A stretch of 64,000 bases of DNA from Octopus bimaculoides (GCF_001194135.2 NC_068986.1:30703131-30767130), one strand, 5' to 3'; counted from the stretch's first letter, positions 2,856 through 64,000 are shown. Program-made: numbers and translations. The notes: generated by a model not told the origin, from the sequence alone.

Positions 2856-3091
2856 NNNNNNNNNNNNNNNNNNNNNNNNNNNNNNNNNNNNNNNNNNNNN
2901 NNNNNNNNNNNNNNNNNNNNNNNNNNNNNNNNNNNNNNNNNNNNNNNNNNNNNNNNNNNNNNNNNNNNNNNNNNNNNNNNNNNNNNNNNNNNNNNNNNNN
3001 NNNNNNNNNNNNNNNNNNNNNNNNNNNNNNNNNNNNNNNNNNNNNNNNNNNNNNNNNNNNNNNNNNNNNNNNNNNNNNNNNNNNNNNNNNN

Positions 3092-20784: not shown

Positions 20785-20835
20785 NNNNNNNNNNNNNNNN
20801 NNNNNNNNNNNNNNNNNNNNNNNNNNNNNNNNNNN

Positions 20836-34280: not shown

Positions 34281-37241
34281 TTCCCAAGATATATATATAT
34301 ATATGAGTGGTTGGCGTTAGGAAGGGCATCCAGCTGTAGAAACTCTGCCAAATTAGATTGGAGCCTGGTGTTGCCATCCGGTTTCACCAGTCCTCAGTCA
34401 AATTGTCCAACCTACACTAGCATGGAAAGCGGACGTTAAACGACGATGATGATGATGATGATGATGATATAATATAAATGCACAAAAATATATATATATA
34501 CAATAGTCGAGTACCTTGTTGCTGGGTAATTTTCACAATAGAATGCCTTGGTGGACTTTTGGAATAGCATACCCATATAAGTGGGATTTTCTGTTTTGAT
34601 GGAGGGGTTTCAAATTTTTCTCTCTATACCCCTGCAGATGATGGGTGGGGGAAGCTTTTTATGAAAAAATTTTGGAAAATTTGATTCTTCTCCCACTGGA
34701 CTTTTTTACGTATATTTTTCAAACCTCCTCCCTAACTCGGTACCAATTTTGGCTTTTTTTTTTTTCTTTTGCACTGTACACAAGAAAAACTGTATTGGTT
34801 TAAAAAAAAAAGGAATTTTGGGAAATCAACGATCACCATTACAACCACCACCACTTTTATTTTCAAATAGAAAATTAAACACAATTCAAAAACAATAGAT
34901 CATAGTTTTAAAATACAGATAGTCCAAATCTATAATTTGTTTCCTTTTATAATTGTAAAATAATTTTCAGACAGAAAGGTGTATGATTTGAGGAAGATAT
35001 AGCTGTTGTTTGCAGCACATTGTACAGCCACCTAGCACCTTACTCGCTTCTTTGTCACTCTGACGTATTGATATTTTTCTCCCCATAAACACATCTTATG
35101 GAATGATAATGCAGAAGTAACTGCTTAGATTTTTTTTAAATCACTCTGTTGCCCTAATGAAATTCCTTACACATGTTCATACACTGTAAGCAATGTACAT
35201 ATACAGAGTGAGAGAGAAAGTGAAAAATGAAAGAGATATACAAATAAAGAGATTCGAGTGAGATCGTTGCCAGTGCCACTGGACTGGCTGCTATGCAGGA
35301 CACGAAACTTGGCTTGTGAAGACCTGTTGGGGCAAGCAAAATCGTGACGGCACCTGTGCCCAGCGTCGCCTTCCTGGCACGTGCAAAGACATTTGAGCGA
35401 GATCGTTGCCAGTGCCGCTGGACTGGCTCCTGTGCAGGTGGCACGTAAAATACACCATTTTGAGCATTGCCAGTACCGTCTGACTGGCCTTCATGCTGGT
35501 GGCACGTAAAAGCACCCACTACACTCTCGGAGTGGTTGGCGTTAGGAAGGGCATCCAGCTGTAGAAACTCTGCCAAATCAGATTGGAGCCTGGTGTAGCC
35601 ATCTGGTTCACCAGTCCTCAGTCAAATCGTCCAACCCATGCTAGCATGGAAAGCAGACGTTAANNNNNNNNNNNNNNNNNNNNNNNNNNNNNNNNNNNNN
35701 NNNNNNNNNNNNNNNNNNNNNNNNNNNNNNNNNNNNNNNNNNNNNNNNNNNNNNNNNNNNNNNNNNNNNNNNNNNNNNNNNNNNNNNNNNNNNNNNNNNN
35801 NNNNNNNNNNNNNNNNNNNNNNNNNNNNNNNNNNNNNNNNNNNNNNNNNNNNNNNNNNNNNNNNNNNNNNNNNNNNNNNNNNNNNNNNNNNNNNNNNNNN
35901 NNNNNNNNNNNNNNNNNNNNNNNNNNNNNNNNNNNNNNNNNNNNNNNNNNNNNNNNNNNNNNNNNNNNNNNNNNNNNNNNNNNNNNNNNNNNNNNNNNNN
36001 NNNNNNNNNNNNNNNNNNNNNNNNNNNNNNNNNNNNNNNNNNNNNNNNNNNNNNNNNNNNNNNNNNNNNNNNNNNNNNNNNNNNNNNNNNNNNNNNTTTA
36101 TGGACAACCTTCTCTTCAAGATGGATTTCAAAAATCAAATTTGCTTTTCTCAACAACACACTTACATAACCACGCGTGTAAGAGGCATAGTGACGGATAC
36201 CTTTGTATCTGACCAGGGGTTAGTTAACTTTTTATGTTACCACCTTAGTAGTAAGATCAGGCTGGAGAAGAGGTACCTGTCACGAGACAGATTCATGAGA
36301 AGATGGAAGCCAGTGGCGAGGAAGCTGGGAGTGTTTGGCACCAGGTAAGTGGAAGCCAAAAGCAAGGGGTCTACCCTGGTGGTCTGATGCCTATCTTTCA
36401 GGAAAGCCATTACAAATTGCATCTGTAATGAGCAATGCTTTAATCGAACATTGGGAATATAATCAAATTATTATTGTATATTTAAGATTGTAAATATTTA
36501 ATCAATACAGCTACTTCACCCCTTTTATGTTTGTTTGTCCCCTCTTTGTAATGCCTTTATGGCAAATATTTATGAAATAAAGTAGCTTGTTTCCAAACCA
36601 CATGGTTCCGGGTTCAGTCCCACTGTGTGGCAACTTGGGCAACTGTTTTCTACTATAGCCTCAGGCCAAACTAAGACTTGTAAGTGGATTTGGTAAGCGG
36701 AAACTGAAAGAAGCCCATCATATATGTATATATATATATAAGTACATATGTGTCTGTGTTTATTCCTCCCAACATTGCTTGACAACCATTGACGGTGGTG
36801 TGTTTACGTCCCTGTAACCTAGCAGTTCAGCAAAAAAGACTGCTATAATAAGAACTAGATTTACAAAGAANNNNNNNNNNGTCCAACCCATGCTAGCATG
36901 GAAAGCAGACGTTAAACGATGATGATGAAGTGAATATTTGTGAATTTGGTATATTGATATAGTTTGTCATGTTTAATCTGACTCTGATTCATTTATTCTA
37001 GAAAAATTTGAGAAAAATGTTACAGAGGTTTAAAGTTTGATCGTTTTTACCCAATCAAGACAATAGGATTTGTGCATGATAGCAGACATTAGAAGACAAA
37101 GTTTTAAACAAAAATGAAAGCAACTGCATGCCATATGAAGAGAGTGGGGGAGCAGCATGTGTGAGAGACAATACATATACAGAGAGAACGTGATCTATAA
37201 GTTGAGTTATTTCTCATGGCAAATTTTTTTTTTTTTTTTTT

Positions 37242-38101
37242 NNNNNNNNNNNNNNNNNNNNNNNNNNNNNNNNNNNNNNNNNNNNNNNNNNNNNNNNNNN
37301 NNNNNNNNNNNNNNNNNNNNNNNNNNNNNNNNNNNNNNNNNNNNNNNNNNNNNNNNNNNNNNNNNNNNNNNNNNNNNNNNNNNNNNNNNNNNNNNNNNNN
37401 NNNNNNNNNNNNNNNNNNNNNNNNNNNNNNNNNNNNNNNNNNNNNNNNNNNNNNNNNNNNNNNNNNNNNNNNNNNNNNNNNNNNNNNNNNNNNNNNNNNN
37501 NNNNNNNNNNNNNNNNNNNNNNNNNNNNNNNNNNNNNNNNNNNNNNNNNNNNNNNNNNNNNNNNNNNNNNNNNNNNNNNNNNNNNNNNNNNNNNNNNNNN
37601 NNNNNNNNNNNNNNNNNNNNNNNNNNNNNNNNNNNNNNNNNNNNNNNNNNNNNNNNNNNNNNNNNNNNNNNNNNNNNNNNNNNNNNNNNNNNNNNNNNNN
37701 NNNNNNNNNNNNNNNNNNNNNNNNNNNNNNNNNNNNNNNNNNNNNNNNNNNNNNNNNNNNNNNNNNNNNNNNNNNNNNNNNNNNNNNNNNNNNNNNNNNN
37801 NNNNNNNNNNNNNNNNNNNNNNNNNNNNNNNNNNNNNNNNNNNNNNNNNNNNNNNNNNNNNNNNNNNNNNNNNNNNNNNNNNNNNNNNNNNNNNNNNNNN
37901 NNNNNNNNNNNNNNNNNNNNNNNNNNNNNNNNNNNNNNNNNNNNNNNNNNNNNNNNNNNNNNNNNNNNNNNNNNNNNNNNNNNNNNNNNNNNNNNNNNNN
38001 NNNNNNNNNNNNNNNNNNNNNNNNNNNNNNNNNNNNNNNNNNNNNNNNNNNNNNNNNNNNNNNNNNNNNNNNNNNNNNNNNNNNNNNNNNNNNNNNNNNN
38101 N
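37242..38101. other. Assembly gap; others at 2856-3091, 20785-20835, 35664-36096, 36871-36880
   Basis: Runs of N. Confidence 1.
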
Positions 38102-57200: not shown

Positions 57201-57203
57201 ATG
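57201..57203 (+). CDS. RPL14: RPL14 exon 1 coding part (ATG only)
   Basis: gccATG|gtaagg strong donor; the next exon begins in phase 0 with VFNRKF, the same layout as vertebrate RPL14. Confidence 0.8.
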
Positions 57204-58060
57204 GTAAGGAATGTAAAATTATTCTGTCGCTAAAATCTGCTGTAAAAAATGGTATTTCATTTCTAAATTAAATTTATTTCTCTTTTGGCTTTAACTGGGG
57301 GAACTTAGAACGTTATTCTGTTATATAAACTTTAGTTTTAATCTTGTGAAATCGTTTAAATTGTGAAATTTATTCCCATCGTTTTTCAACATGGCGTGAT
57401 AGAAATCTTTCCTAAATGTAATCATCCTAACCACGTTTCTCTTTTAATAATTATTATCTTTTTTGTCTCTCACACGATTTCTAATTAGTAAATATGATGG
57501 TTCTCCAAAGTCATGAATATTTGTTTAAAATCGATGTTTAAAAAAAGATATCCTTTATATGTGAAAATCCTATTTTAAAACCTTCAGCTCTATATCATCA
57601 TCCACGTGTTATCAACTTTTCACCCACCACACTCGCTTAACAATCAAGTGAAAGGCTTTTTTTTTTTAAAGTCATATAAAGTTGTTGCTTAATTGTATAT
57701 TCTAAATTTTTTAATGGCAAACCAAAAAAAATTATCTTTATGAATTTAAGCATCGCCTCTCGGTCTGCATTTGTAATTTATCGAGAGTATTTTGGAACAA
57801 ATGAAATGAGTTTTATTGATAATTTCTTGGGGATGGGGTGGGGCTATACGTGCATCTTTTTAGGTGGTTAAATTTTTATTTACAGCTGAAAATCCTGAAA
57901 ATGTGTAGATTCTTGAAAAATATATAAAAAAAAAAAACAGCCGATTATGTGGCATGCTTCGGTAAAAATATATTCAAACGACTCCCTTCTGAACCCTTTC
58001 CCTCATCTATGAGGATCCAAATCTGCCGACACTAATTAACTAGTTCTTAAGTTCGGATGC

Positions 58061-58404: not shown

Positions 58405-58657
58405 TTCGGATGCATCCTAGAACGTAAATAATTCACGCATCCAGGATTAAAAAAACCAGTTACGATCTAAGATCAGAAGTGATGAAATTATAGTGTAAAA
58501 GGTTAATACGAAATGCTTTTATCCTGAAAGACCGAGCCCTCGTCAGAAAAATGTTATTAATTATGGATTCTAATTTTTAAGAATACTGCATTGCTTGCTA
58601 TATATATGTTTGAAAATATAAATCACACGTGCATCGTTTTTTTTTTTAATTCTATAG

Positions 58658-58762
58658 GTGTTCAATCGGAAATTCGTGGAGGTGGGTCGTGTGGCCTACA
58701 TCGTTAAAGGTGTAGATTCTGGGAAATTGTGCGTCATTATCGACGTTATTGACCAAAACAGA
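58658..58762 (+). CDS. RPL14: RPL14 (eL14) exon 2
   Basis: tatag/…/gtaagt; [35 protein letters not shown]. Confidence 0.96.
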
Positions 58763-58873
58763 GTAAGTTAAAACTTTTTCTGGAGGTACACTCAATGTTT
58801 TTAAAATACCAGGTTGTAATGTTCTTTTTGTAGTCTGAAAATTGGTTTTCCTGCAGTTTCAAAATTATTGAAC

Positions 58874-58930
58874 ATGATGTTAAAATACGGAAGTGGTCTG
58901 ATTGATAGAGATGACAATTTTCATTACTGA
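58874..58930 (+). ncRNA. Box C/D snoRNA candidate, subfamily A copy 1 (RPL14 intron 2)
   Basis: C ATGATGT 58874, D' CTGA 58898, D CTGA 58927; near-identical to the copies at 60491 and 62227. Confidence 0.65.
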
Positions 58931-59343
58931 TATCATTAGTTTTGAAACTGAAGGCTACAAAATATAGCAAATTATCTGATAGTTTAATATAGTTTATCGA
59001 TATATTAGCGCTAACACTCTATCAAAGATAATGTTTTGACAGTGTCGTGTTTTATACAGTAATTTATATATACTGGTTTGTTTCCTATTTTCATTTAAGA
59101 AACCATGACATTTTGTAAATATGAAATCGTGAACTGAGTTAAACATAGCTGAAAGGATGAATGTGCAAAATGCGTTTGATTTATTCTTTTCAATTAGTAA
59201 ACTGGAATACAGTTTATGCAAGATATTAATATCTAGTGAAAAACTTTCCTTATCAACTTATGAGAGTGGAGTGGTTTGTATATGGACACATACAGATATG
59301 TGCATAAACATATGTATACCCCAATAATTGCATAGTGTGGTCC

Positions 59344-59559
59344 AGATGGACTATATGTAATTTGAACCTTTCCCCCCATGTTTTATTTATTTTTTTACGG
59401 AATCCCACGTTTTAGGCTATGGAGATTCCGATTCTGAAAGAAATTTTTCAAAATTTTTTTTTTTCAGAATCGGAATCTCCATAGCCTAAAACGTGGGATT
59501 CCGTTAAAAAAATTAATAAATAAGGGGGGGGAAAGGTTCAGATTACATATAGTCCATCT
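59344..59559. mobile_element. Hairpin MITE in RPL14 intron 2
   Basis: Arms of ~95 nt, including a perfect ~43-bp core around a ~20-nt loop. Confidence 0.75.
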
Positions 59560-60036
59560 CTACCGCATAGTGTTATAAAGAAATAAAAATTTACATTGGT
59601 TGGGAGTGATGTTGAGATTTGAGAAACTAGGGGCTGGATTTCACAGAGACAACACAGACCTTTGAATATTTTGTGTATATCATCCTTAATATTTGTCAAG
59701 TTTAAGTACCATCCTAATATATGCTTGGCATCTTAGGTATCTGTCTTCCATTATATCCTTGAGTTAAATATATTGTGAATGAGATTTGATGGAGAAAGAA
59801 AATCTATCAGACTTGTATGTTCCTGTGTTTTTATATGTCCTTTGACTTAGTGGCTTATCAAAAAATGATTGATAAAATACCAGACTGCAATAAGTACTGG
59901 GGTTGATGTGATTGACTAGAACTCTTGAAGGTGGTGTCCCAGTATAACTGCAGTCTAAGAATTGAAGCTAGTAAAACATATAAAAAGAAAACTTTTTTTT
60001 AAAAATTTTCTATCTAACCATGTTTCATAATTATAG

Positions 60037-60231
60037 GCTTTGATTGATGGACCATGCAGTGGTGTCTTAAGAAAAGCTATCAATTTCAATAGTGTACATC
60101 TGACAAGATTTGTCATCAAGATCAGGCACTCTGCAAGAACCATTGAAGTGAAAAGAGCTTGGGATGCTGCTGACATAACTGGTAAATGGTCTCTGACGAA
60201 ATGGGCTCAAAAGATTATGGCAAGAGAAAAG
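60037..60231 (+). CDS. RPL14: RPL14 exon 3 (downstream exon lies outside the window)
   Basis: tatag/…/gtttgt; ALIDGPCSGVLRKAINFNSVHLTRFVIKIRHSARTIEVKRAWDAADITGKWSLTKWAQKIMAREK. Confidence 0.95.
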
Positions 60232-60490
60232 GTTTGTGTTTTCTTTTTTATATTGTGAATTCATTGCATTCAGAACAGATAAACAAGAATTGTTCTCTGG
60301 TGTTCCTTTCTTGGGAACCTTTAAATTTGAGTGGGTTAGCTATATAGAGCTAGAAGTGACCAAGAAATGAGTTGGTGTTAAAAAGATCAATCCACAGGAT
60401 TCAATCCTTCTGCATGTATGTTCAAAATGTTATTTGGCTGAAATGTAATTTCATGTAATCTAAGTCTTCAAAGTTTCAAAATTATTGAAC

Positions 60491-60548
60491 ATGATGTTAA
60501 AAATACGGAAGTGGTCTGATTGATAAGGAAGACAATTTTCTTTACTGA
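60491..60548 (+). ncRNA. Box C/D snoRNA candidate, subfamily A copy 2 (intron 3)
   Basis: C ATGATGT 60491, guide aatacggaagtggt, D' 60516, D 60545. Confidence 0.65.
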
Positions 60549-61098
60549 TATCATTAATTTTGACACTGAAGACTAGAAATATCTGATAAGTAATTTTAAT
60601 GGTATAATAATTGGCACAAGCAATGGGAGAAATGTCAAAAAGATTTTGCATCTTAGGTATTGATGATTATAAAAAATATTTTAAAGATAAATAGTGGGGA
60701 TATCTGTAAGGAAGAAATTTTTTCATGAAACATTTCTAGTCTAATAATCGCTATCAGAAACGTATAATTTGATGGGGTGTTTCATGTCATTTAGTGAATT
60801 AATATGTAACTTTTACATTTACTGACTAAATTTCACAGTAATTTAAACCAATTTTGGTTACAATTCTGCAAAGTGTTTATAAAGGTGGTTTTCATTAAAA
60901 TAATAGATTTTTACACAAGTAATCAGTAAATCTAGTGTCAGACATTGAAATTTCATTTTTGGCCTATAACTCCCACCCTTTGTTAGCTTCCAGATATTTA
61001 GAAAAGAATGGAATAAGAGACAAAGCTACATGGTTATGAAACGTATGTTGTTAGCTACACCTGCATCAATTATACACAAACACAAACCCAATTAGAAC

Positions 61099-61155
61099 GT
61101 GATGAGAAATGGAAGTGCCGTCTGAATTTATAAGAGGACAAACCTTCATCTCTGA
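61099..61155 (+). ncRNA. Box C/D snoRNA candidate, subfamily B copy 1
   Basis: C GTGATGA 61099, guide tggaagtgccgt, D' 61122, D 61152. Confidence 0.78.
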
Positions 61156-61651
61156 GTGTCCAATTTGGTGTATACAGAAGGAAATTTTCCTACCTATATA
61201 TGTCCAGTAGGGGGGGGGGGATTACGCGCTATTATATCTTAGAATTGTGTCAAGACCATTATCAGTTTTTCCTTTCTGGTAGGAAGCTAAATATAAGGGG
61301 GAAAGGTAAGATGGTAGTGATGGGGTTCCAGAGCAAAATCAACAAATAGATGATATAGATTGCAGGTTAATAAGGGTGAGAGGGGAGAGTACAAAAGTGA
61401 GGTGTGGCTTGAAGGAAAATATCTGGATGGCAAATATTATGAGCAAGGCTTACGAACAGTGTAGAGGATGAGGAATTATGTTAGGGATGAAGTTGAAATG
61501 AGATGCAATCACTATGCTGTAATTGGTGGTTAGCATTTACTTGCATGACTTCACAGTTGCTTGGAGGATATTTGGTCAGTTCTTAAAGGCTTATTTAATG
61601 TTAATTGTGCTCTCTGCATTTATGTGTGTAGCAGATAAATTTTGTTAGAAC

Positions 61652-61706
61652 ATGATGAGACCTGGAAGTGCCGTCTGAACTCTCAGGAAGACGCTTTCAA
61701 ATCTGA
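61652..61706 (+). ncRNA. Box C/D snoRNA candidate, subfamily C copy 1
   Basis: C ATGATGA 61652, D' 61675, D 61703; short terminal stem taga(a)c/gtcta. Confidence 0.8.
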
Positions 61707-62226
61707 GTCTATATGGCATCTTTGGTTAATAGCTTGAAGAGGATTAAATGAAAACTACTTTTAGTGTTTTGGTGGTTTAAAAAAAAAAATGTTAATTTTT
61801 ATAGCTATAACAACAAAAATATAACTAAATATTGCACAGATTTGTAGCTGTTTGAGATACTCATTATGAAGATGGTTTTATTAGTCCCCTCTTTGTTGTA
61901 GTTCTTGACTTTGGTTGGTACCAATCTGTTCAGCTTTGATATTGAAATGTTAGATTAGCTGAGACATGATGCTCCAGTAATATCTGCTGCACATTGTAAA
62001 GCCTGGGTAAAATTTCTGACAGTCCAGCACATGCAAGTTGCTGATGGTTAAACAATAATTAATGAAGGAAAAGGACAATAGCACTCATTGCTTATAATAT
62101 GTATGGATTAGCCATTAAATTATATTATGGTAAAAACCTACAAATAATTTTGTTTACATTGTTATATGGCTTGACTATGATTTCCTGTAATTTAAAAGTG
62201 TCTTCAATGTTTCAAAATTATTGAAC

Positions 62227-62284
62227 ATGATGTTAAAAATACGGAAGTGGTCTGATTGATAGAGAAGACAATTTTCTTTACTGA
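62227..62284 (+). ncRNA. Box C/D snoRNA candidate, subfamily A copy 3
   Basis: C ATGATGT 62227, D' 62252, D 62281. Confidence 0.65.
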
Positions 62285-62713
62285 TATCATTAATTTTGAC
62301 ACTGAAGACTAGAAATATCTGATAAGTAATTTTAGGGGTATAATAATTGGCACAAATCACCATCAGAAAGGTATAATTTGGTGGGTGTTTCATGTCATTT
62401 AGCGAATTAATATGTAATTTTTACATTTACTGATTAAATTTCACAGTAATTTAAACCAATTTTAAGAAATTAGTTATAATTTTGGAAAGTGTTAACAAAG
62501 ATCATTAAAATATATCTTTACTCAAGTAACTAGTGAGTCTAGAGTTTTCTCCCTTGTGCAGCGATTTAAATCTAGTGTCGGGCATGTATTTTTGGTTTAT
62601 CAACATATAATCTCAACCCTTCAAGATATTTAGAAAGGAAGCTACATGGTTACAAAACAATCTGTGGTCACTTAACCACGCCTACATCTGTTACACACAA
62701 ACCCAATTAGAGC

Positions 62714-62770
62714 GTGATGAGAAATGGAAGTGCCGTCTGAATTCATAAGAAGACAAACCTTCATCTCTGA
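62714..62770 (+). ncRNA. Box C/D snoRNA candidate, subfamily B copy 2
   Basis: C GTGATGA 62714, D' 62737, D 62767; core differs from copy 1 at only 2 positions. Confidence 0.78.
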
Positions 62771-63270
62771 GTATCTAATTTGGTGTATACAGAGAAAAAA
62801 TTGTCCTACCTATATATGTCGGGTGGGGTAGATGGTACCTAGCTATTTTAGAATAGTGTGTCAAGACCATTATCCAAGTTGTGTTTTTTTTTTCTTTCTG
62901 ATAGGTAGTTAACTATCAGGGGAAAGGTAAGGTGGTAGTGATGGGGATTCCAGAGCAAAATCAACAAATAGGTGATATGGATTGCAGATCAGGAGTAGGG
63001 TGTGGCTAATATGTGGGGAATGAAGGGTGAAGGAAAATATCTGGGTGGCAAAAATAATGAGCAAGGCATACGAACAATGTAGAGGATGAGAAATTACATT
63101 AGAGATGAAGTTGAAATGAGATGCAATTACTATGCTGTAATTGGTAGTTAGCATTTACTTGCATGACTTCACAGTTGCTTGAAAGATATTTGGTCAGTTC
63201 TTAAAGGCTATTTAATATTAATTGTGCTCCCTGCATTTATGTGTGTAGCATAAATAAATTTCGTTAGAAC

Positions 63271-63325
63271 ATGATGAGACATGGAAGTGCCGTCTGAACT
63301 CTCAGGAAGACGCTTTCAAATCTGA
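63271..63325 (+). ncRNA. Box C/D snoRNA candidate, subfamily C copy 2
   Basis: C ATGATGA 63271, D' 63294, D 63322; core differs from copy 1 at 1 position. Confidence 0.8.
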
Positions 63326-64000
63326 GTCTATACGGTATCTTTGGTTAATAGTTTGAAGAGGATAGAATGAAAGCAATACTCTTAGCAATTTGGTGTGTTT
63401 TGTTTTTATTTTTATAGCTATGACTTGATTACTGTTGTTGACAGCAAAAATGTAACTAAGTAATATTGCACAGATTTGTAAATGTTTGATGTACTCATTA
63501 TGAAGATAGTTTTGTCTCTTCCTTGTAGTTCTTGACTTTGGCTGGTACCAATCTGTTCAGCTTTGATATTGAAATATGTTAAATTGAGACATCAAATTCC
63601 AGTAATATCTGGTACACATTGTTGGGTAAAACTTTGCATTGGCAATGAAATTATGGATCCTGTTATTCTGCTAGAAACTAGATTACTTTTGTCTATATGG
63701 TATGTTTAACAAAAAAAGATTTAAAAAGCCAGTATGTACATTTACCTCATAAATGAAATAATGTTGCTGGTGTTTCTACAGTATCATTTTTACAATTTTC
63801 ACCACTTCCTAGTTAAATCTTCATAAACGTTCAAATTTTAATTTGGACATTTTCAGTGTTGGAAAGGACAATGTTCTTGGTTCTTCCCTTGTACCAGTTT
63901 GTATTTCCTTCATTTCTAATTAATACTTCAATACTCTTGCACCATAAGTATTACATTCCATCCTTTCTTGATCTCCATTGCTTCATAACTACTATCAAAG

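What the first reader, a model, noticed from the sequence alone, without database searches (positions are those of the whole stretch)
58874..63325. Seven-copy box C/D snoRNA array in RPL14, six copies in a single intron
Seen: seven 55-58-nt cores with the order C box (RTGATGA, or ATGATGT in subfamily A) - GGAAGTG-containing guide - CTGA (D') - short spacer - GA(A/G)GAC (GAGATGAC in A1)…TTC - CTGA (D). Order is A | exon 3 | A-B-C-A-B-C. Cores are nearly identical between duplicate units while spacers carry indels, which suggests selection on the RNA. Established: ribosomal protein genes are classic snoRNA hosts, and vertebrate intronic C/D snoRNAs are normally released one per intron by exonucleolytic trimming of the lariat. 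Inference: a three-subfamily polycistronic C/D cluster in one animal intron needs another release route (extra splicing, endonucleolytic cuts, or sno-lncRNA-like doubly capped RNAs). I do not recognise the family.
Basis: partly seen in the sequence, partly recalled or inferred. Interest (0 to 1): 0.85.

Follow-up and report, generated by a model that had tools for sequence, protein, structure and literature searches.

The report
U49-type snoRNA array in octopus RPL14
Two introns of the Octopus bimaculoides ribosomal protein L14 gene carry a tandemly amplified set of small nucleolar guide RNA genes of the old U49/SNORD49 type, which RPL14 also hosts in other molluscs, an annelid and arthropods; packing seven or more into one animal intron is unusual, and how they are cut out is untested.

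Summary
An eighth copy lies just past the window end.

The family can be named. Subfamilies B and C, and the eighth copy ("E"), carry the 12-nt D' guide GGAAGUGCCGUC of SNORD49/U49. They score below Rfam's threshold (25.8 bits against 37). Subfamily A is a derivative with a 2-nt deletion in that guide and has no recognisable target.

The host link is old. RPL14 introns of Pomacea, Babylonia, Crassostrea, Mytilus, Owenia, a mantis shrimp and a tick carry U49-like copies. Mytilus has seven in the homologous intron.

Octopus vulgaris and O. sinensis have eleven copies, including B/C recombinants, so the array grows by unequal crossing-over.

Cores are more conserved than spacers between the two O. 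bimaculoides units (171/176 against 1072/1204, no indels; p = 2e-4). The cross-species octopus comparison lacks power (p = 0.21).

All octopus copies lie more than 600 nt from the next 3' splice site. Most sit inside 15-22 bp external stems, which suggests splicing-independent assembly and endonucleolytic release. That step, expression and the rRNA target are inferred, not shown.

This is a new variant of a known kind.

The parts
58658..58762 (+). RPL14 exon 2 (codons 2-36); intron 2 follows (58763-60036)
   Evidence: tblastn of P0001 on L004; AG/GTAAGT boundaries read
58874..58930 (+). snoRNA core A1 (C box AUGAUGU, D' CUGA, C' AGAUGA, D CUGA), in intron 2, 1106 nt upstream of exon 3
58850..58867 (+). 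5' arm of the A1 external stem (CCU.CAGUUUCAAAAUUA)
   Evidence: fold of 58840-58965: -30.4 kcal/mol, z = -3.7
58937..58954 (+). 3' arm of the A1 external stem (UAGUUUUGAAACUG.AGG)
   Evidence: Homology between A1 and A2 is limited to a 111-nt block, 58855-58965 against 60472-60582, which is the core plus the stem arms
60037..60231 (+). RPL14 exon 3 (codons 37-101); intron 3 starts at 60232 and runs past the window end (exon 4 at L004 10599, which would be window position 64847)
60464..60484 (+). 5' arm of the A2 external stem
   Evidence: -31.9 kcal/mol, z = -3.8
60491..60548 (+). snoRNA core A2
60555..60573 (+). 3' arm of the A2 external stem
61099..61155 (+). snoRNA core B1 (D' guide UGGAAGUGCCGU, U49 type)
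   Evidence: SNORD49 RF00277 25.8 bits against a threshold of 37
61652..61706 (+). snoRNA core C1 (same D' guide, different D guide)
   Evidence: SNORD49 20.0 bits
62200..62220 (+). 5' arm of the A3 external stem
   Evidence: -29.5 kcal/mol, z = -3.0
62227..62284 (+). snoRNA core A3
62291..62309 (+). 3' arm of the A3 external stem
62688..62711 (+). 5' arm of the B2 external stem (18 pairs in three segments)
   Evidence: -23.7 kcal/mol, z = -2.0
62714..62770 (+). snoRNA core B2
   Evidence: SNORD49 25.9 bits
62774..62792 (+). 3' arm of the B2 external stem
63271..63325 (+). snoRNA core C2
60419..62015 (+). tandem unit 1 (A2-B1-C1 with spacers)
   Evidence: local alignment with unit 2; repeat families D1-D13
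62151..63634 (+). tandem unit 2 (A3-B2-C2 with spacers)

Best explanation
The region is a tandemly amplified cluster of box C/D snoRNA genes of the U49/SNORD49 lineage. They sit on the sense strand of introns 2 and 3 of the Octopus bimaculoides RPL14 gene.

Shown:
- Each unit has a C box, a D' box, a degenerate C' box and a D box at canonical spacing.
- B, C and E share an invariant 12-nt D' guide identical to the SNORD49 consensus. A is a derivative with a 2-nt deletion and a 1-nt insertion in that guide.
- U49-like snoRNAs occupy RPL14 introns in molluscs, an annelid and two arthropods, so the host association predates cephalopods.
- Copy number differs between Octopus species, and B/C recombinant copies exist, so the array changes by unequal crossing-over.

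Inferred:
- The units are co-transcribed with RPL14.
- All of them lie more than 600 nt from the next 3' splice site, and A, B and E sit inside 15-22 bp external stems. I infer that snoRNP proteins (SNU13, NOP56, NOP58, fibrillarin) assemble independently of splicing.
- Seven snoRNPs in one intron cannot all be freed by trimming the two ends of the debranched intron. I therefore infer endonucleolytic cuts in the spacers or stems, followed by exonucleolytic trimming down to the protected core of about 65 nt.
- B, C and E most likely guide 2'-O-methylation of the large-subunit rRNA C that corresponds to human 28S C4456, in the peptidyl-transferase region. A has lost that complementarity and is either an orphan or retargeted.
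For: Motif specificity and order.

Host and exons.

Guide identity with the SNORD49 and plasmodium_snoR28 consensus. U49 is an ancient family with Arabidopsis and Plasmodium members. SNORD49A/B guide 28S Cm4456, which is Cm4426 in the older numbering (PMC9941101).

The complement of the SNORD49 consensus guide finds one recurrent site in 122 eukaryotic LSU loci, GTCGGCTCTTCCTAT, with 2 mismatches.

Invariance across 30 copies in three Octopus species: the boxes in every copy, the 12-nt U49-type guide in all 17 B/BC/C/E copies, and a single form of the A guide in all 13 A copies. All differences between the two units fall in the D'-C' spacer, the C' box or the 5' edge of the guide.

Core against spacer conservation: p = 2.3e-4 with no indels in cores. 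Homology between A1 and A2, which sit in different introns, is confined to 111 nt, the core plus the stems.

U49-like copies in RPL14 introns: Pomacea 1+1, Babylonia 2+2, Crassostrea 3+1, Mytilus 7 in one intron, Owenia 1+1, Oratosquilla 2, Ornithodoros 2. One tick copy scores 35.2 bits to SNORD49.

Terminal stems have lineage-specific sequences: own-flank pairing averages 5.0 pairs against 2.7 for cross-lineage pairings.

External stems. Published rule: box C/D assembly is normally splicing-dependent at about 50 nt upstream of the branch point, and long external stems make it splicing-independent (PMC5519232).

B/C chimeras and unit lengths in O. vulgaris and O. sinensis.
Against: There is no expression data, so no copy is shown to give a stable small RNA.

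Every octopus copy is below Rfam's SNORD49 threshold (25.9 bits at best against 37).

In Octopus the guide pairs with the LSU site by only 4 + 5 bp around a U.U mismatch. The duplex energy is -15.7 kcal/mol, and 19-35 of 500 shuffled guides do as well. The human and tick guides give -21 kcal/mol.

An equally stable pairing exists with the SSU 530 loop, with G.U at the target position.

Between O. bimaculoides and O. vulgaris, cores are not significantly more conserved than spacers (216/226 against 2374/2548, p = 0.21).

No conserved rRNA target was found for the A guide or for any D guide.

No endonuclease site is demonstrated.
Confidence: 0.7

Rival explanations
1. Most copies are young, decaying duplicates. 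One or a few units are processed into functional snoRNA, and the rest are neutral passengers of a recent intronic tandem duplication. Their identity reflects recency or gene conversion, not selection on each copy.
For: Spacers are 89-93% identical between units, so the duplication is recent. The O. bimaculoides against O. vulgaris comparison shows no significant excess conservation of cores (p = 0.21). The octopus guide has weakened complementarity to the canonical target. The D guide of subfamily A varies between copies (CAUUA, CUUUA, UUUUA, with length changes).
Against: No copy out of 30 in three species has a disrupted C, D' or D box or an indel in the core. Spacers carry 47 indel events per unit pair. 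Substitutions are depleted in cores (p = 2.3e-4). Independent multi-copy arrays exist in Mytilus (7), Crassostrea (3+1) and Babylonia (2+2).
Confidence: 0.2
2. The array mainly yields sno-lncRNAs. After splicing, exonucleases stop at the outermost or neighbouring snoRNPs, so the 0.5-0.9 kb spacers survive as long RNAs capped by snoRNPs at both ends. These may accumulate alongside, or instead of, free snoRNAs.
For: Two snoRNA genes in one intron are the stated prerequisite for a sno-lncRNA, and a ribosomal-protein gene (mouse RPL13A) makes one (PMC4234469). Seven units here share one intron, 487-889 nt apart.
Against: No expression data. Spacers are poorly conserved and rich in indels, so no function is evident in the spacer sequence. 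Plants and Plasmodium release individual snoRNAs from clustered precursors.
Confidence: 0.15
3. Each copy lies in its own intron in some transcripts, because unannotated cryptic exons in the spacers are spliced (as in SNORD116-type or GAS5-type hosts). Canonical release by trimming from the intron ends would then suffice.
For: Only the general precedent of repeated exon-intron snoRNA hosts, and AG...GT-flanked segments that can be read in the spacers. Some spacer blocks are 93-96% identical between units (D2 and D5).
Against: The candidate AG...GT segment next to A2 lies in the 127-nt stretch that is missing from unit 2. Spacers are full of indels. The annotated protein isoforms use only the five coding exons. 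Such transcripts would carry premature stops in a highly expressed ribosomal-protein mRNA.
Confidence: 0.08
4. The cores are not snoRNAs but a repeated mobile element or a hairpin (miRNA-like) precursor that happens to contain box-like words.
For: The A, B and E units are embedded in long inverted repeats. An unrelated palindromic insertion sits in intron 2.
Against: The composite motif has a chance expectation of 0.03 per 128 kb. The guide is identical to a curated snoRNA family. Homologues with different flanks and covarying terminal stems sit in the same host gene in three phyla. No other copy exists in 64 kb.
Confidence: 0.02

Closest known systems
SNORD49A/B (U49; Rfam RF00277, clan CL00062), human; guides 28S Cm4456 (Cm4426 in the older numbering)
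   Same: Box C/D architecture and a length of about 65-71 nt. The D' guide GGAAGUGCCGUC is identical in octopus B, C and E. The C' box is of the GA(C/A)GA type.
   Different: The human genes are not in RPL14 (from my own knowledge they are in a non-coding host, SNHG29, one per intron). The octopus copies lack the 5' AUA extension of the guide and about 9 nt between the C box and the guide. Their D guides are unrelated to the consensus. Scores are 19-26 bits, below the 37-bit threshold.
RPL14-hosted U49-like snoRNAs of other protostomes
   Same: Same host gene. In the four mollusc species the copies start in the intron that follows the exon for residues about 37-101. Same box order. The guide core is GGAA(G/U)UGCCG. 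Copies are often multiple, with seven in one Mytilus intron.
   Different: Their guide is GAUAGGAAUUGCCGUC (U instead of G at guide position 7, and with the AUA extension). They have contiguous 6-11 bp terminal stems next to the boxes rather than distant external stems. The tick copies lie about 65-70 nt from the 3' splice site, the canonical position. The bivalve copies have C box AUGAAGA and D box CAGA.
snoR77Y (RF01178) and Tetrahymena TtnuCD7 type guides, which pair with the SSU 530 loop
   Same: The guide UGGAAUUACCGUCUGA differs from the octopus guide at two positions. The Owenia and Oratosquilla RPL14 copies score higher against snoR77Y (31-34 bits) than against SNORD49 (22-23 bits).
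   Different: Position 5 is A, a Watson-Crick partner for the SSU U. In the RPL14-hosted copies it is G. All scores are below the 52-bit threshold. The GAUAGG extension of the protostome copies pairs with LSU, not SSU.
Intronic snoRNA gene clusters of rice, H/ACA clusters of Drosophila, and the two-snoRNA intron of Plasmodium falciparum
   Same: Several snoRNA genes lie in one intron of a host gene, which implies processing that is not one-per-intron.
   Different: Those are in plants and a protist, or concern H/ACA snoRNAs in flies. Drosophila box C/D snoRNAs are reported to follow one per intron (PMC3089462). Here the cluster is made of paralogues of one box C/D family in an animal protein-coding gene.
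SNORD116 arrays and sno-lncRNAs, including the mouse RPL13A sno-lncRNA
   Same: Tandemly repeated box C/D units. Two or more snoRNAs in one intron.
   Different: SNORD116 units each normally have their own intron in a non-coding host. Nothing here shows that spacer RNA accumulates.
Bombyx mori box C/D loci Bm-42 to Bm-45
   Same: A cluster of box C/D snoRNAs next to RPL14, with a tandem pair (PMC3089462).
   Different: They are described as intergenic, downstream of RPL14. Their sequences and targets were not available here, so homology is untested.

Membership tests
Box C/D snoRNA | C box (RUGAUGA) near the 5' end and D box (CUGA) near the 3' end | tested here: met
   All 7 window copies, and all 30 copies in three Octopus species. 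Subfamily A has AUGAUGU together with an A (not U) before the D box, which keeps the pair between C-box position 7 and the nucleotide before CUGA.
Box C/D snoRNA | Internal D' and C' boxes with guide-length spacing | tested here: met
   D' CUGA is invariant. C' is degenerate (NGANGA, with both GA dinucleotides invariant). There are 16-19 nt between C and D', 7-8 nt between D' and C', and 10-13 nt between C' and D.
Box C/D snoRNA | Terminal stem that brings the C and D boxes together | tested here: met
   The immediate stems are short or bulged (2-4 pairs; 5-6 in C). A, B and E also have 15-22 bp external stems (z = -2 to -3.8). Relatives in other phyla have 6-11 bp stems with lineage-specific sequences.
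Box C/D snoRNA | Guide of at least about 10 nt complementary to rRNA or snRNA, with the target opposite the 5th nucleotide upstream of D or D' | tested here: inconclusive
   B, C and E pair with LSU GUCGGCUCUUCC by 4 + 5 bp around a U.U mismatch, or with the SSU 530 loop at 11 of 12 positions with G.U at the target. No target was found for the A guide or the D guides in 122 eukaryotic rDNA loci and a partial Lottia LSU. No octopus rRNA was available.
Box C/D snoRNA | Stable RNA of about 60-90 nt bound by fibrillarin, NOP56, NOP58 and SNU13 | not testable with these tools
   No transcriptome or RIP data were accessible.
SNORD49/U49 (Rfam RF00277) | Score at or above the curated gathering threshold (37 bits) | tested here: not met
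   B 25.8 and 25.9 bits, C 20.0 and 18.9, A 12.3. There were no hits in the gathering-threshold run. The tick RPL14 copy scores 35.2.
SNORD49/U49 (Rfam RF00277) | D' guide GGAAGUGCCGUC upstream of the D' box | tested here: met
   Identical in B, C and E and in the Rfam consensus and plasmodium_snoR28. Not met by A (GGAAGUG--GUC).
SNORD49/U49 (Rfam RF00277) | Guides methylation of the LSU C equivalent to human 28S C4456 | tested here: inconclusive
   The register of the pairing puts guide position 5 opposite the C of GGC*UCUUCC. That this C is C4456 rests on my own count from the A-loop positions, not on a tool. Methylation in octopus is untested.
SNORD49/U49 (Rfam RF00277) | Second (D) guide of the family (U49 is listed with two LSU targets, Cm2409 and Cm4426) | tested here: not met
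   The octopus D guides (CAAACCUUCAUCU, CGCUUUCAAAU, CAAUCUUCAAAC, CAAUUUUCUUUA) do not resemble the consensus uaacuauuccUGu. This is a sequence comparison only.
Intronic snoRNA gene cluster | Two or more snoRNA genes in one intron, on the sense strand of the host | tested here: met
   Six copies in the window part of intron 3 and seven in the whole intron. O. vulgaris and O. sinensis have ten.
Intronic snoRNA gene cluster | Individual snoRNAs released from a polycistronic intronic precursor | not testable with these tools
   Needs RNA data.
sno-lncRNA | Accumulation of the sequence between two snoRNAs, with snoRNP-protected ends | not testable with these tools
   The positional prerequisite is met (for the rule). 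Accumulation is unknown.

The most novel reading that the evidence does not exclude
The octopus array is more than extra dosage of one guide. Subfamily A, whose guide is invariant in 13 copies, three species and two introns but pairs with neither rRNA site, would be a retargeted guide with a new, possibly non-rRNA, substrate. The U49-type guide of B, C and E would be a two-site guide, pairing with both the LSU peptidyl-transferase-region motif and the SSU 530 loop, and so bridging the SNORD49 and snoR77Y-type families. The seven-to-ten-unit intron would be processed by a stem-directed endonuclease and/or would yield a series of sno-lncRNAs.
Probability: 0.2. Interest if true: 0.65.

Novelty: new variant of a known kind. 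Interest (0 to 1): 0.45.

Why it matters
Animal box C/D snoRNAs are taken to follow a one-per-intron rule tied to splicing-dependent assembly. An intron holding seven to ten intact units, and similar arrays in mussel and oyster, gives a natural system to ask how animals release clustered intronic C/D snoRNAs, and whether such introns make sno-lncRNAs.

The finding also documents a host-gene association (RPL14 with U49-like snoRNAs) that is stable across at least three protostome phyla. That bears on the debate over how mobile snoRNAs are relative to their hosts.

Finally, it shows a guide family sitting between two curated families with two similar rRNA sites. Public octopus RNA-seq and RiboMeth-seq would settle most of these points.

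Tried and rejected
- Rfam at gathering thresholds found nothing in the window, or in O. vulgaris, Pomacea, Crassostrea and Mytilus loci. Only the E-value runs were informative.
- I searched for rRNA targets of the A guide and the D guides. A scan of 120 metagenomic eukaryotic rDNA loci (32 also carry the SSU 530-loop motif), plus a partial Lottia LSU, gave only singleton matches of the size expected by chance in 660 kb.
- One lead remains. The C-type D guide has 10 Watson-Crick pairs with the Lottia LSU, about 22 nt 3' of the sarcin-ricin loop. That region is variable. By co-linear alignment the site is 4 nt from the site I recall for SNORD78, so I did not assign it.
- I tried to get octopus rDNA through spurious ORFs on rDNA. 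This gave only a partial Lottia LSU.
- I considered U6 snRNA, 5.8S and 18S as targets for A from memory. None fits.
- No squid, cuttlefish or Nautilus RPL14 locus could be reached.
- Priapulus and the sea cucumber Apostichopus showed no U49-like copy in RPL14.
- The supplements of the Bombyx paper and the Drosophila RpL14 snoRNA identities were not retrievable. The Huang 2005 and Liang 2002 papers are not held.
- No covariance model was built, because regex and Rfam scans already recovered all copies.

Full report
**What is there.** The window is Octopus bimaculoides chromosome sequence. On the full locus L004 (window coordinate = L004 + 54248) the gene has:
- an ATG-only first exon;
- exon 2 at window 58658-58762;
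- exon 3 at 60037-60231;
- exons 4 and 5 beyond the window end (boundaries read).

A composite box C/D motif matches seven times, at 58874, 60491, 61099, 61652, 62227, 62714 and 63271. All are on the sense strand and there are no other matches in 64 kb. A Markov null gives 0.03 matches per 128 kb.

A blastn comparison of L004 with the O. vulgaris locus revealed an eighth copy, which I call E. It lies in the same intron at L004 9912-9967, about 160 nt past the window end. The gene therefore carries one copy in intron 2 and seven in intron 3, in four subfamilies: A | A-B-C-A-B-C-E.

**Is it more than a young repeat?** Intron 3 holds a tandem duplication of a 1.6-1.7 kb unit. In a gapped alignment of the two units:
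- the three cores are 171/176 identical with no gap;
- the rest is 1072/1204 identical, with 321 gap columns in 47 events (Fisher p = 2.3e-4).

The five core differences all fall in the D'-C' spacer, the C' box or the 5' edge of the guide region.

Homology between A1 (intron 2) and A2 (intron 3) is confined to a 111-nt block, which is the core plus its flanking stem arms.

O. vulgaris and O. sinensis have eleven copies (1 + 10): A | A-BC-A-BC-A-BC-A-B-C-E. 'BC' has a B-type 5' flank and 5' half, and a C-type 3' half and 3' flank. It is a recombinant with the crossover inside the shared guide. Copy number therefore changes by unequal crossing-over after speciation.

All 30 copies in the three species have intact C, D' and D boxes and no indel in the core.

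Between O. bimaculoides and O. vulgaris the orthologous cores are 216/226 identical and the spacers 2374/2548. That difference is not significant (p = 0.21).

**Which family.** Rfam gives nothing at its curated thresholds. With E-value reporting, B and C match SNORD49 (RF00277) at 25.8, 25.9, 20.0 and 18.9 bits, against a threshold of 37.

The alignments show why. The D' guide GGAAGUGCCGUC is letter-for-letter that of the SNORD49 consensus and of Plasmodium snoR28. UGGAAGUGCCGU is invariant in all 17 B, BC, C and E copies, while the positions 5' of it vary.

U49 is an old family with Arabidopsis and Plasmodium members. SNORD49A/B are assigned to human 28S Cm4456, which is Cm4426 in the older numbering (PMC9941101).

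Subfamily A reads AAUACGGAAGUG--GUCUGA. This is the same guide with a 2-nt deletion next to D' and a 1-nt insertion. It scores 12 bits.

**The host association is old.** I fetched RPL14 loci of other animals through their proteins and searched for the guide core. U49-like box C/D units lie in RPL14 introns on the sense strand in:
- Pomacea (1+1);
- Babylonia (2+2);
- Crassostrea (3+1);
- Mytilus (seven in the intron homologous to octopus intron 3);
- the annelid Owenia (1+1);
- the mantis shrimp Oratosquilla (2);
- the tick Ornithodoros (2).

All carry GAUAGGAAUUGCCG(U/G)C. None was found in Priapulus or in the sea cucumber Apostichopus.

One tick copy scores 35.2 bits to SNORD49. The Owenia and Oratosquilla copies score slightly better to snoR77Y, at 31-34 bits against a threshold of 52.

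The terminal stems next to the boxes have different sequences in each lineage but remain complementary. Own-flank pairing averages 5.0 pairs, against 2.7 for cross-lineage pairings.

The bivalve copies have C box AUGAAGA together with D box CAGA. The two U's that face each other in the K-turn are replaced together.

Two literature points fit. Drosophila RpL14 is listed among snoRNA hosts. A Bombyx box C/D cluster lies next to RPL14. I could not check their sequences.

**Target.** I pulled 120 eukaryotic LSU rDNA loci from metagenomes with the conserved motif GATGTCGGCTCTTCCTATCAT.

The complement of the SNORD49 consensus guide has exactly one recurrent match in them and in Lottia. It is GTCGGCTCTTCCTAT, with two mismatches, both U opposite U. 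Guide position 5 then faces the C of GGC*UC. By my own count from the A-loop positions this is C4456.

Duplex energies with this site:
- human consensus guide: -21.1 kcal/mol;
- tick guide: -20.8 kcal/mol;
- octopus B, C and E: -15.7 kcal/mol (4 + 5 bp; 19-35 of 500 shuffled guides do as well);
- octopus A: -10.1 kcal/mol (no better than shuffles).

The same guides also pair with the SSU 530 loop, GCGGUAAUUCCA. For octopus B, C and E this gives 11 of 12 positions, with G.U at the target position and energies of -15 to -17 kcal/mol.

The LSU site is the best-supported target by homology. In Octopus the assignment remains open.

For the A guide and all four D guides I found no conserved-core rRNA target. 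The 10-bp match of the C-type D guide to the Lottia LSU, 3' of the sarcin-ricin loop, is a lead only.

**How release could work.** The published rule is that vertebrate box C/D snoRNAs sit about 50 nt upstream of the branch point and assemble in a splicing-dependent way. Long external stems make assembly splicing-independent (PMC5519232).

The two tick copies lie about 65-70 nt from the next exon. The octopus copies lie 631 to more than 4000 nt from the next 3' splice site.

A, B and E are embedded in external stems of 15-22 bp, with z-scores from -2 to -3.8. A-to-G changes in the 5' arm of the A stem in O. vulgaris and O. sinensis keep pairing as G.U.

Seven snoRNPs in one debranched intron would block exonucleases. 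Individual release therefore needs cuts in the spacers or stems. Precedents exist in yeast RNase III processing of co-hosted snoRNAs (PMC12508059, listed) and in plant and Plasmodium clusters. Otherwise sno-lncRNAs would form (PMC4234469).

None of this is shown here. It is inference from anatomy.

**Verdict.**
- The thing is a lineage-specific tandem amplification of an ancient RPL14-hosted U49-type box C/D snoRNA, with a shortened guide and one diverged subfamily.
- Clustered intronic snoRNAs are known in plants, in Plasmodium, and for H/ACA snoRNAs in flies. A seven-to-ten-copy box C/D array in one intron of an animal protein-coding gene, with parallels in bivalves, is a new variant of that kind.
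- Interest is moderate.

Noticed in passing
window 59336-59567 (RPL14 intron 2): A near-perfect palindrome of about 230 nt: arms 59372-59443 and 59458-59529 are 88% complementary, with inner 39-nt arms that match exactly. It gives sub-threshold hits to plant and animal miRNA hairpin models (67 bits against 113). It is absent from the orthologous introns of O. vulgaris and O. sinensis, so it looks like a species-specific MITE-like insertion.
   Followed up: partly
L006, L007, L008, L131, L132, L133 (upstream of RPL14): A gene with FAD_binding_4 and FAD-oxidase_C domains lies head-to-head with RPL14 in Pomacea, Crassostrea, Mytilus, Babylonia, Owenia and Priapulus. This is deeply conserved microsynteny. 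It is not seen within 3 kb upstream in Octopus (L004) and I did not look further in the window.
   Followed up: no
L007 4559-7226 and L008 3849-9663: The oyster and mussel U49-like copies have C box (G/A)AUGAAGA and D box CAGA. The U.U position of the K-turn is changed on both sides together.
   Followed up: partly
window 57201-57203 and 57249-57251: Two alternative ATG-only first exons of RPL14 (ATG followed by GT), 48 nt apart. They correspond to the two gene calls in L004 and L005.
   Followed up: no
window 2856-3091, 20785-20835, 35664-36096, 36871-36880, 37242-38101: Runs of N (assembly gaps). The long 'ORFs' listed there are artefacts of the N runs.
   Followed up: yes
L007 8244-8365: A long hairpin downstream of oyster RPL14 gives a sub-threshold MIR447 hit (52 bits against 200). 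It is probably another inverted-repeat element.
   Followed up: no
window 58479-58560 (RPL14 intron 1): A GTGATGA ... CTGA stretch that looks faintly like a C/D unit. It has no terminal stem or clear D box and no Rfam hit. I treated it as chance.
   Followed up: partly
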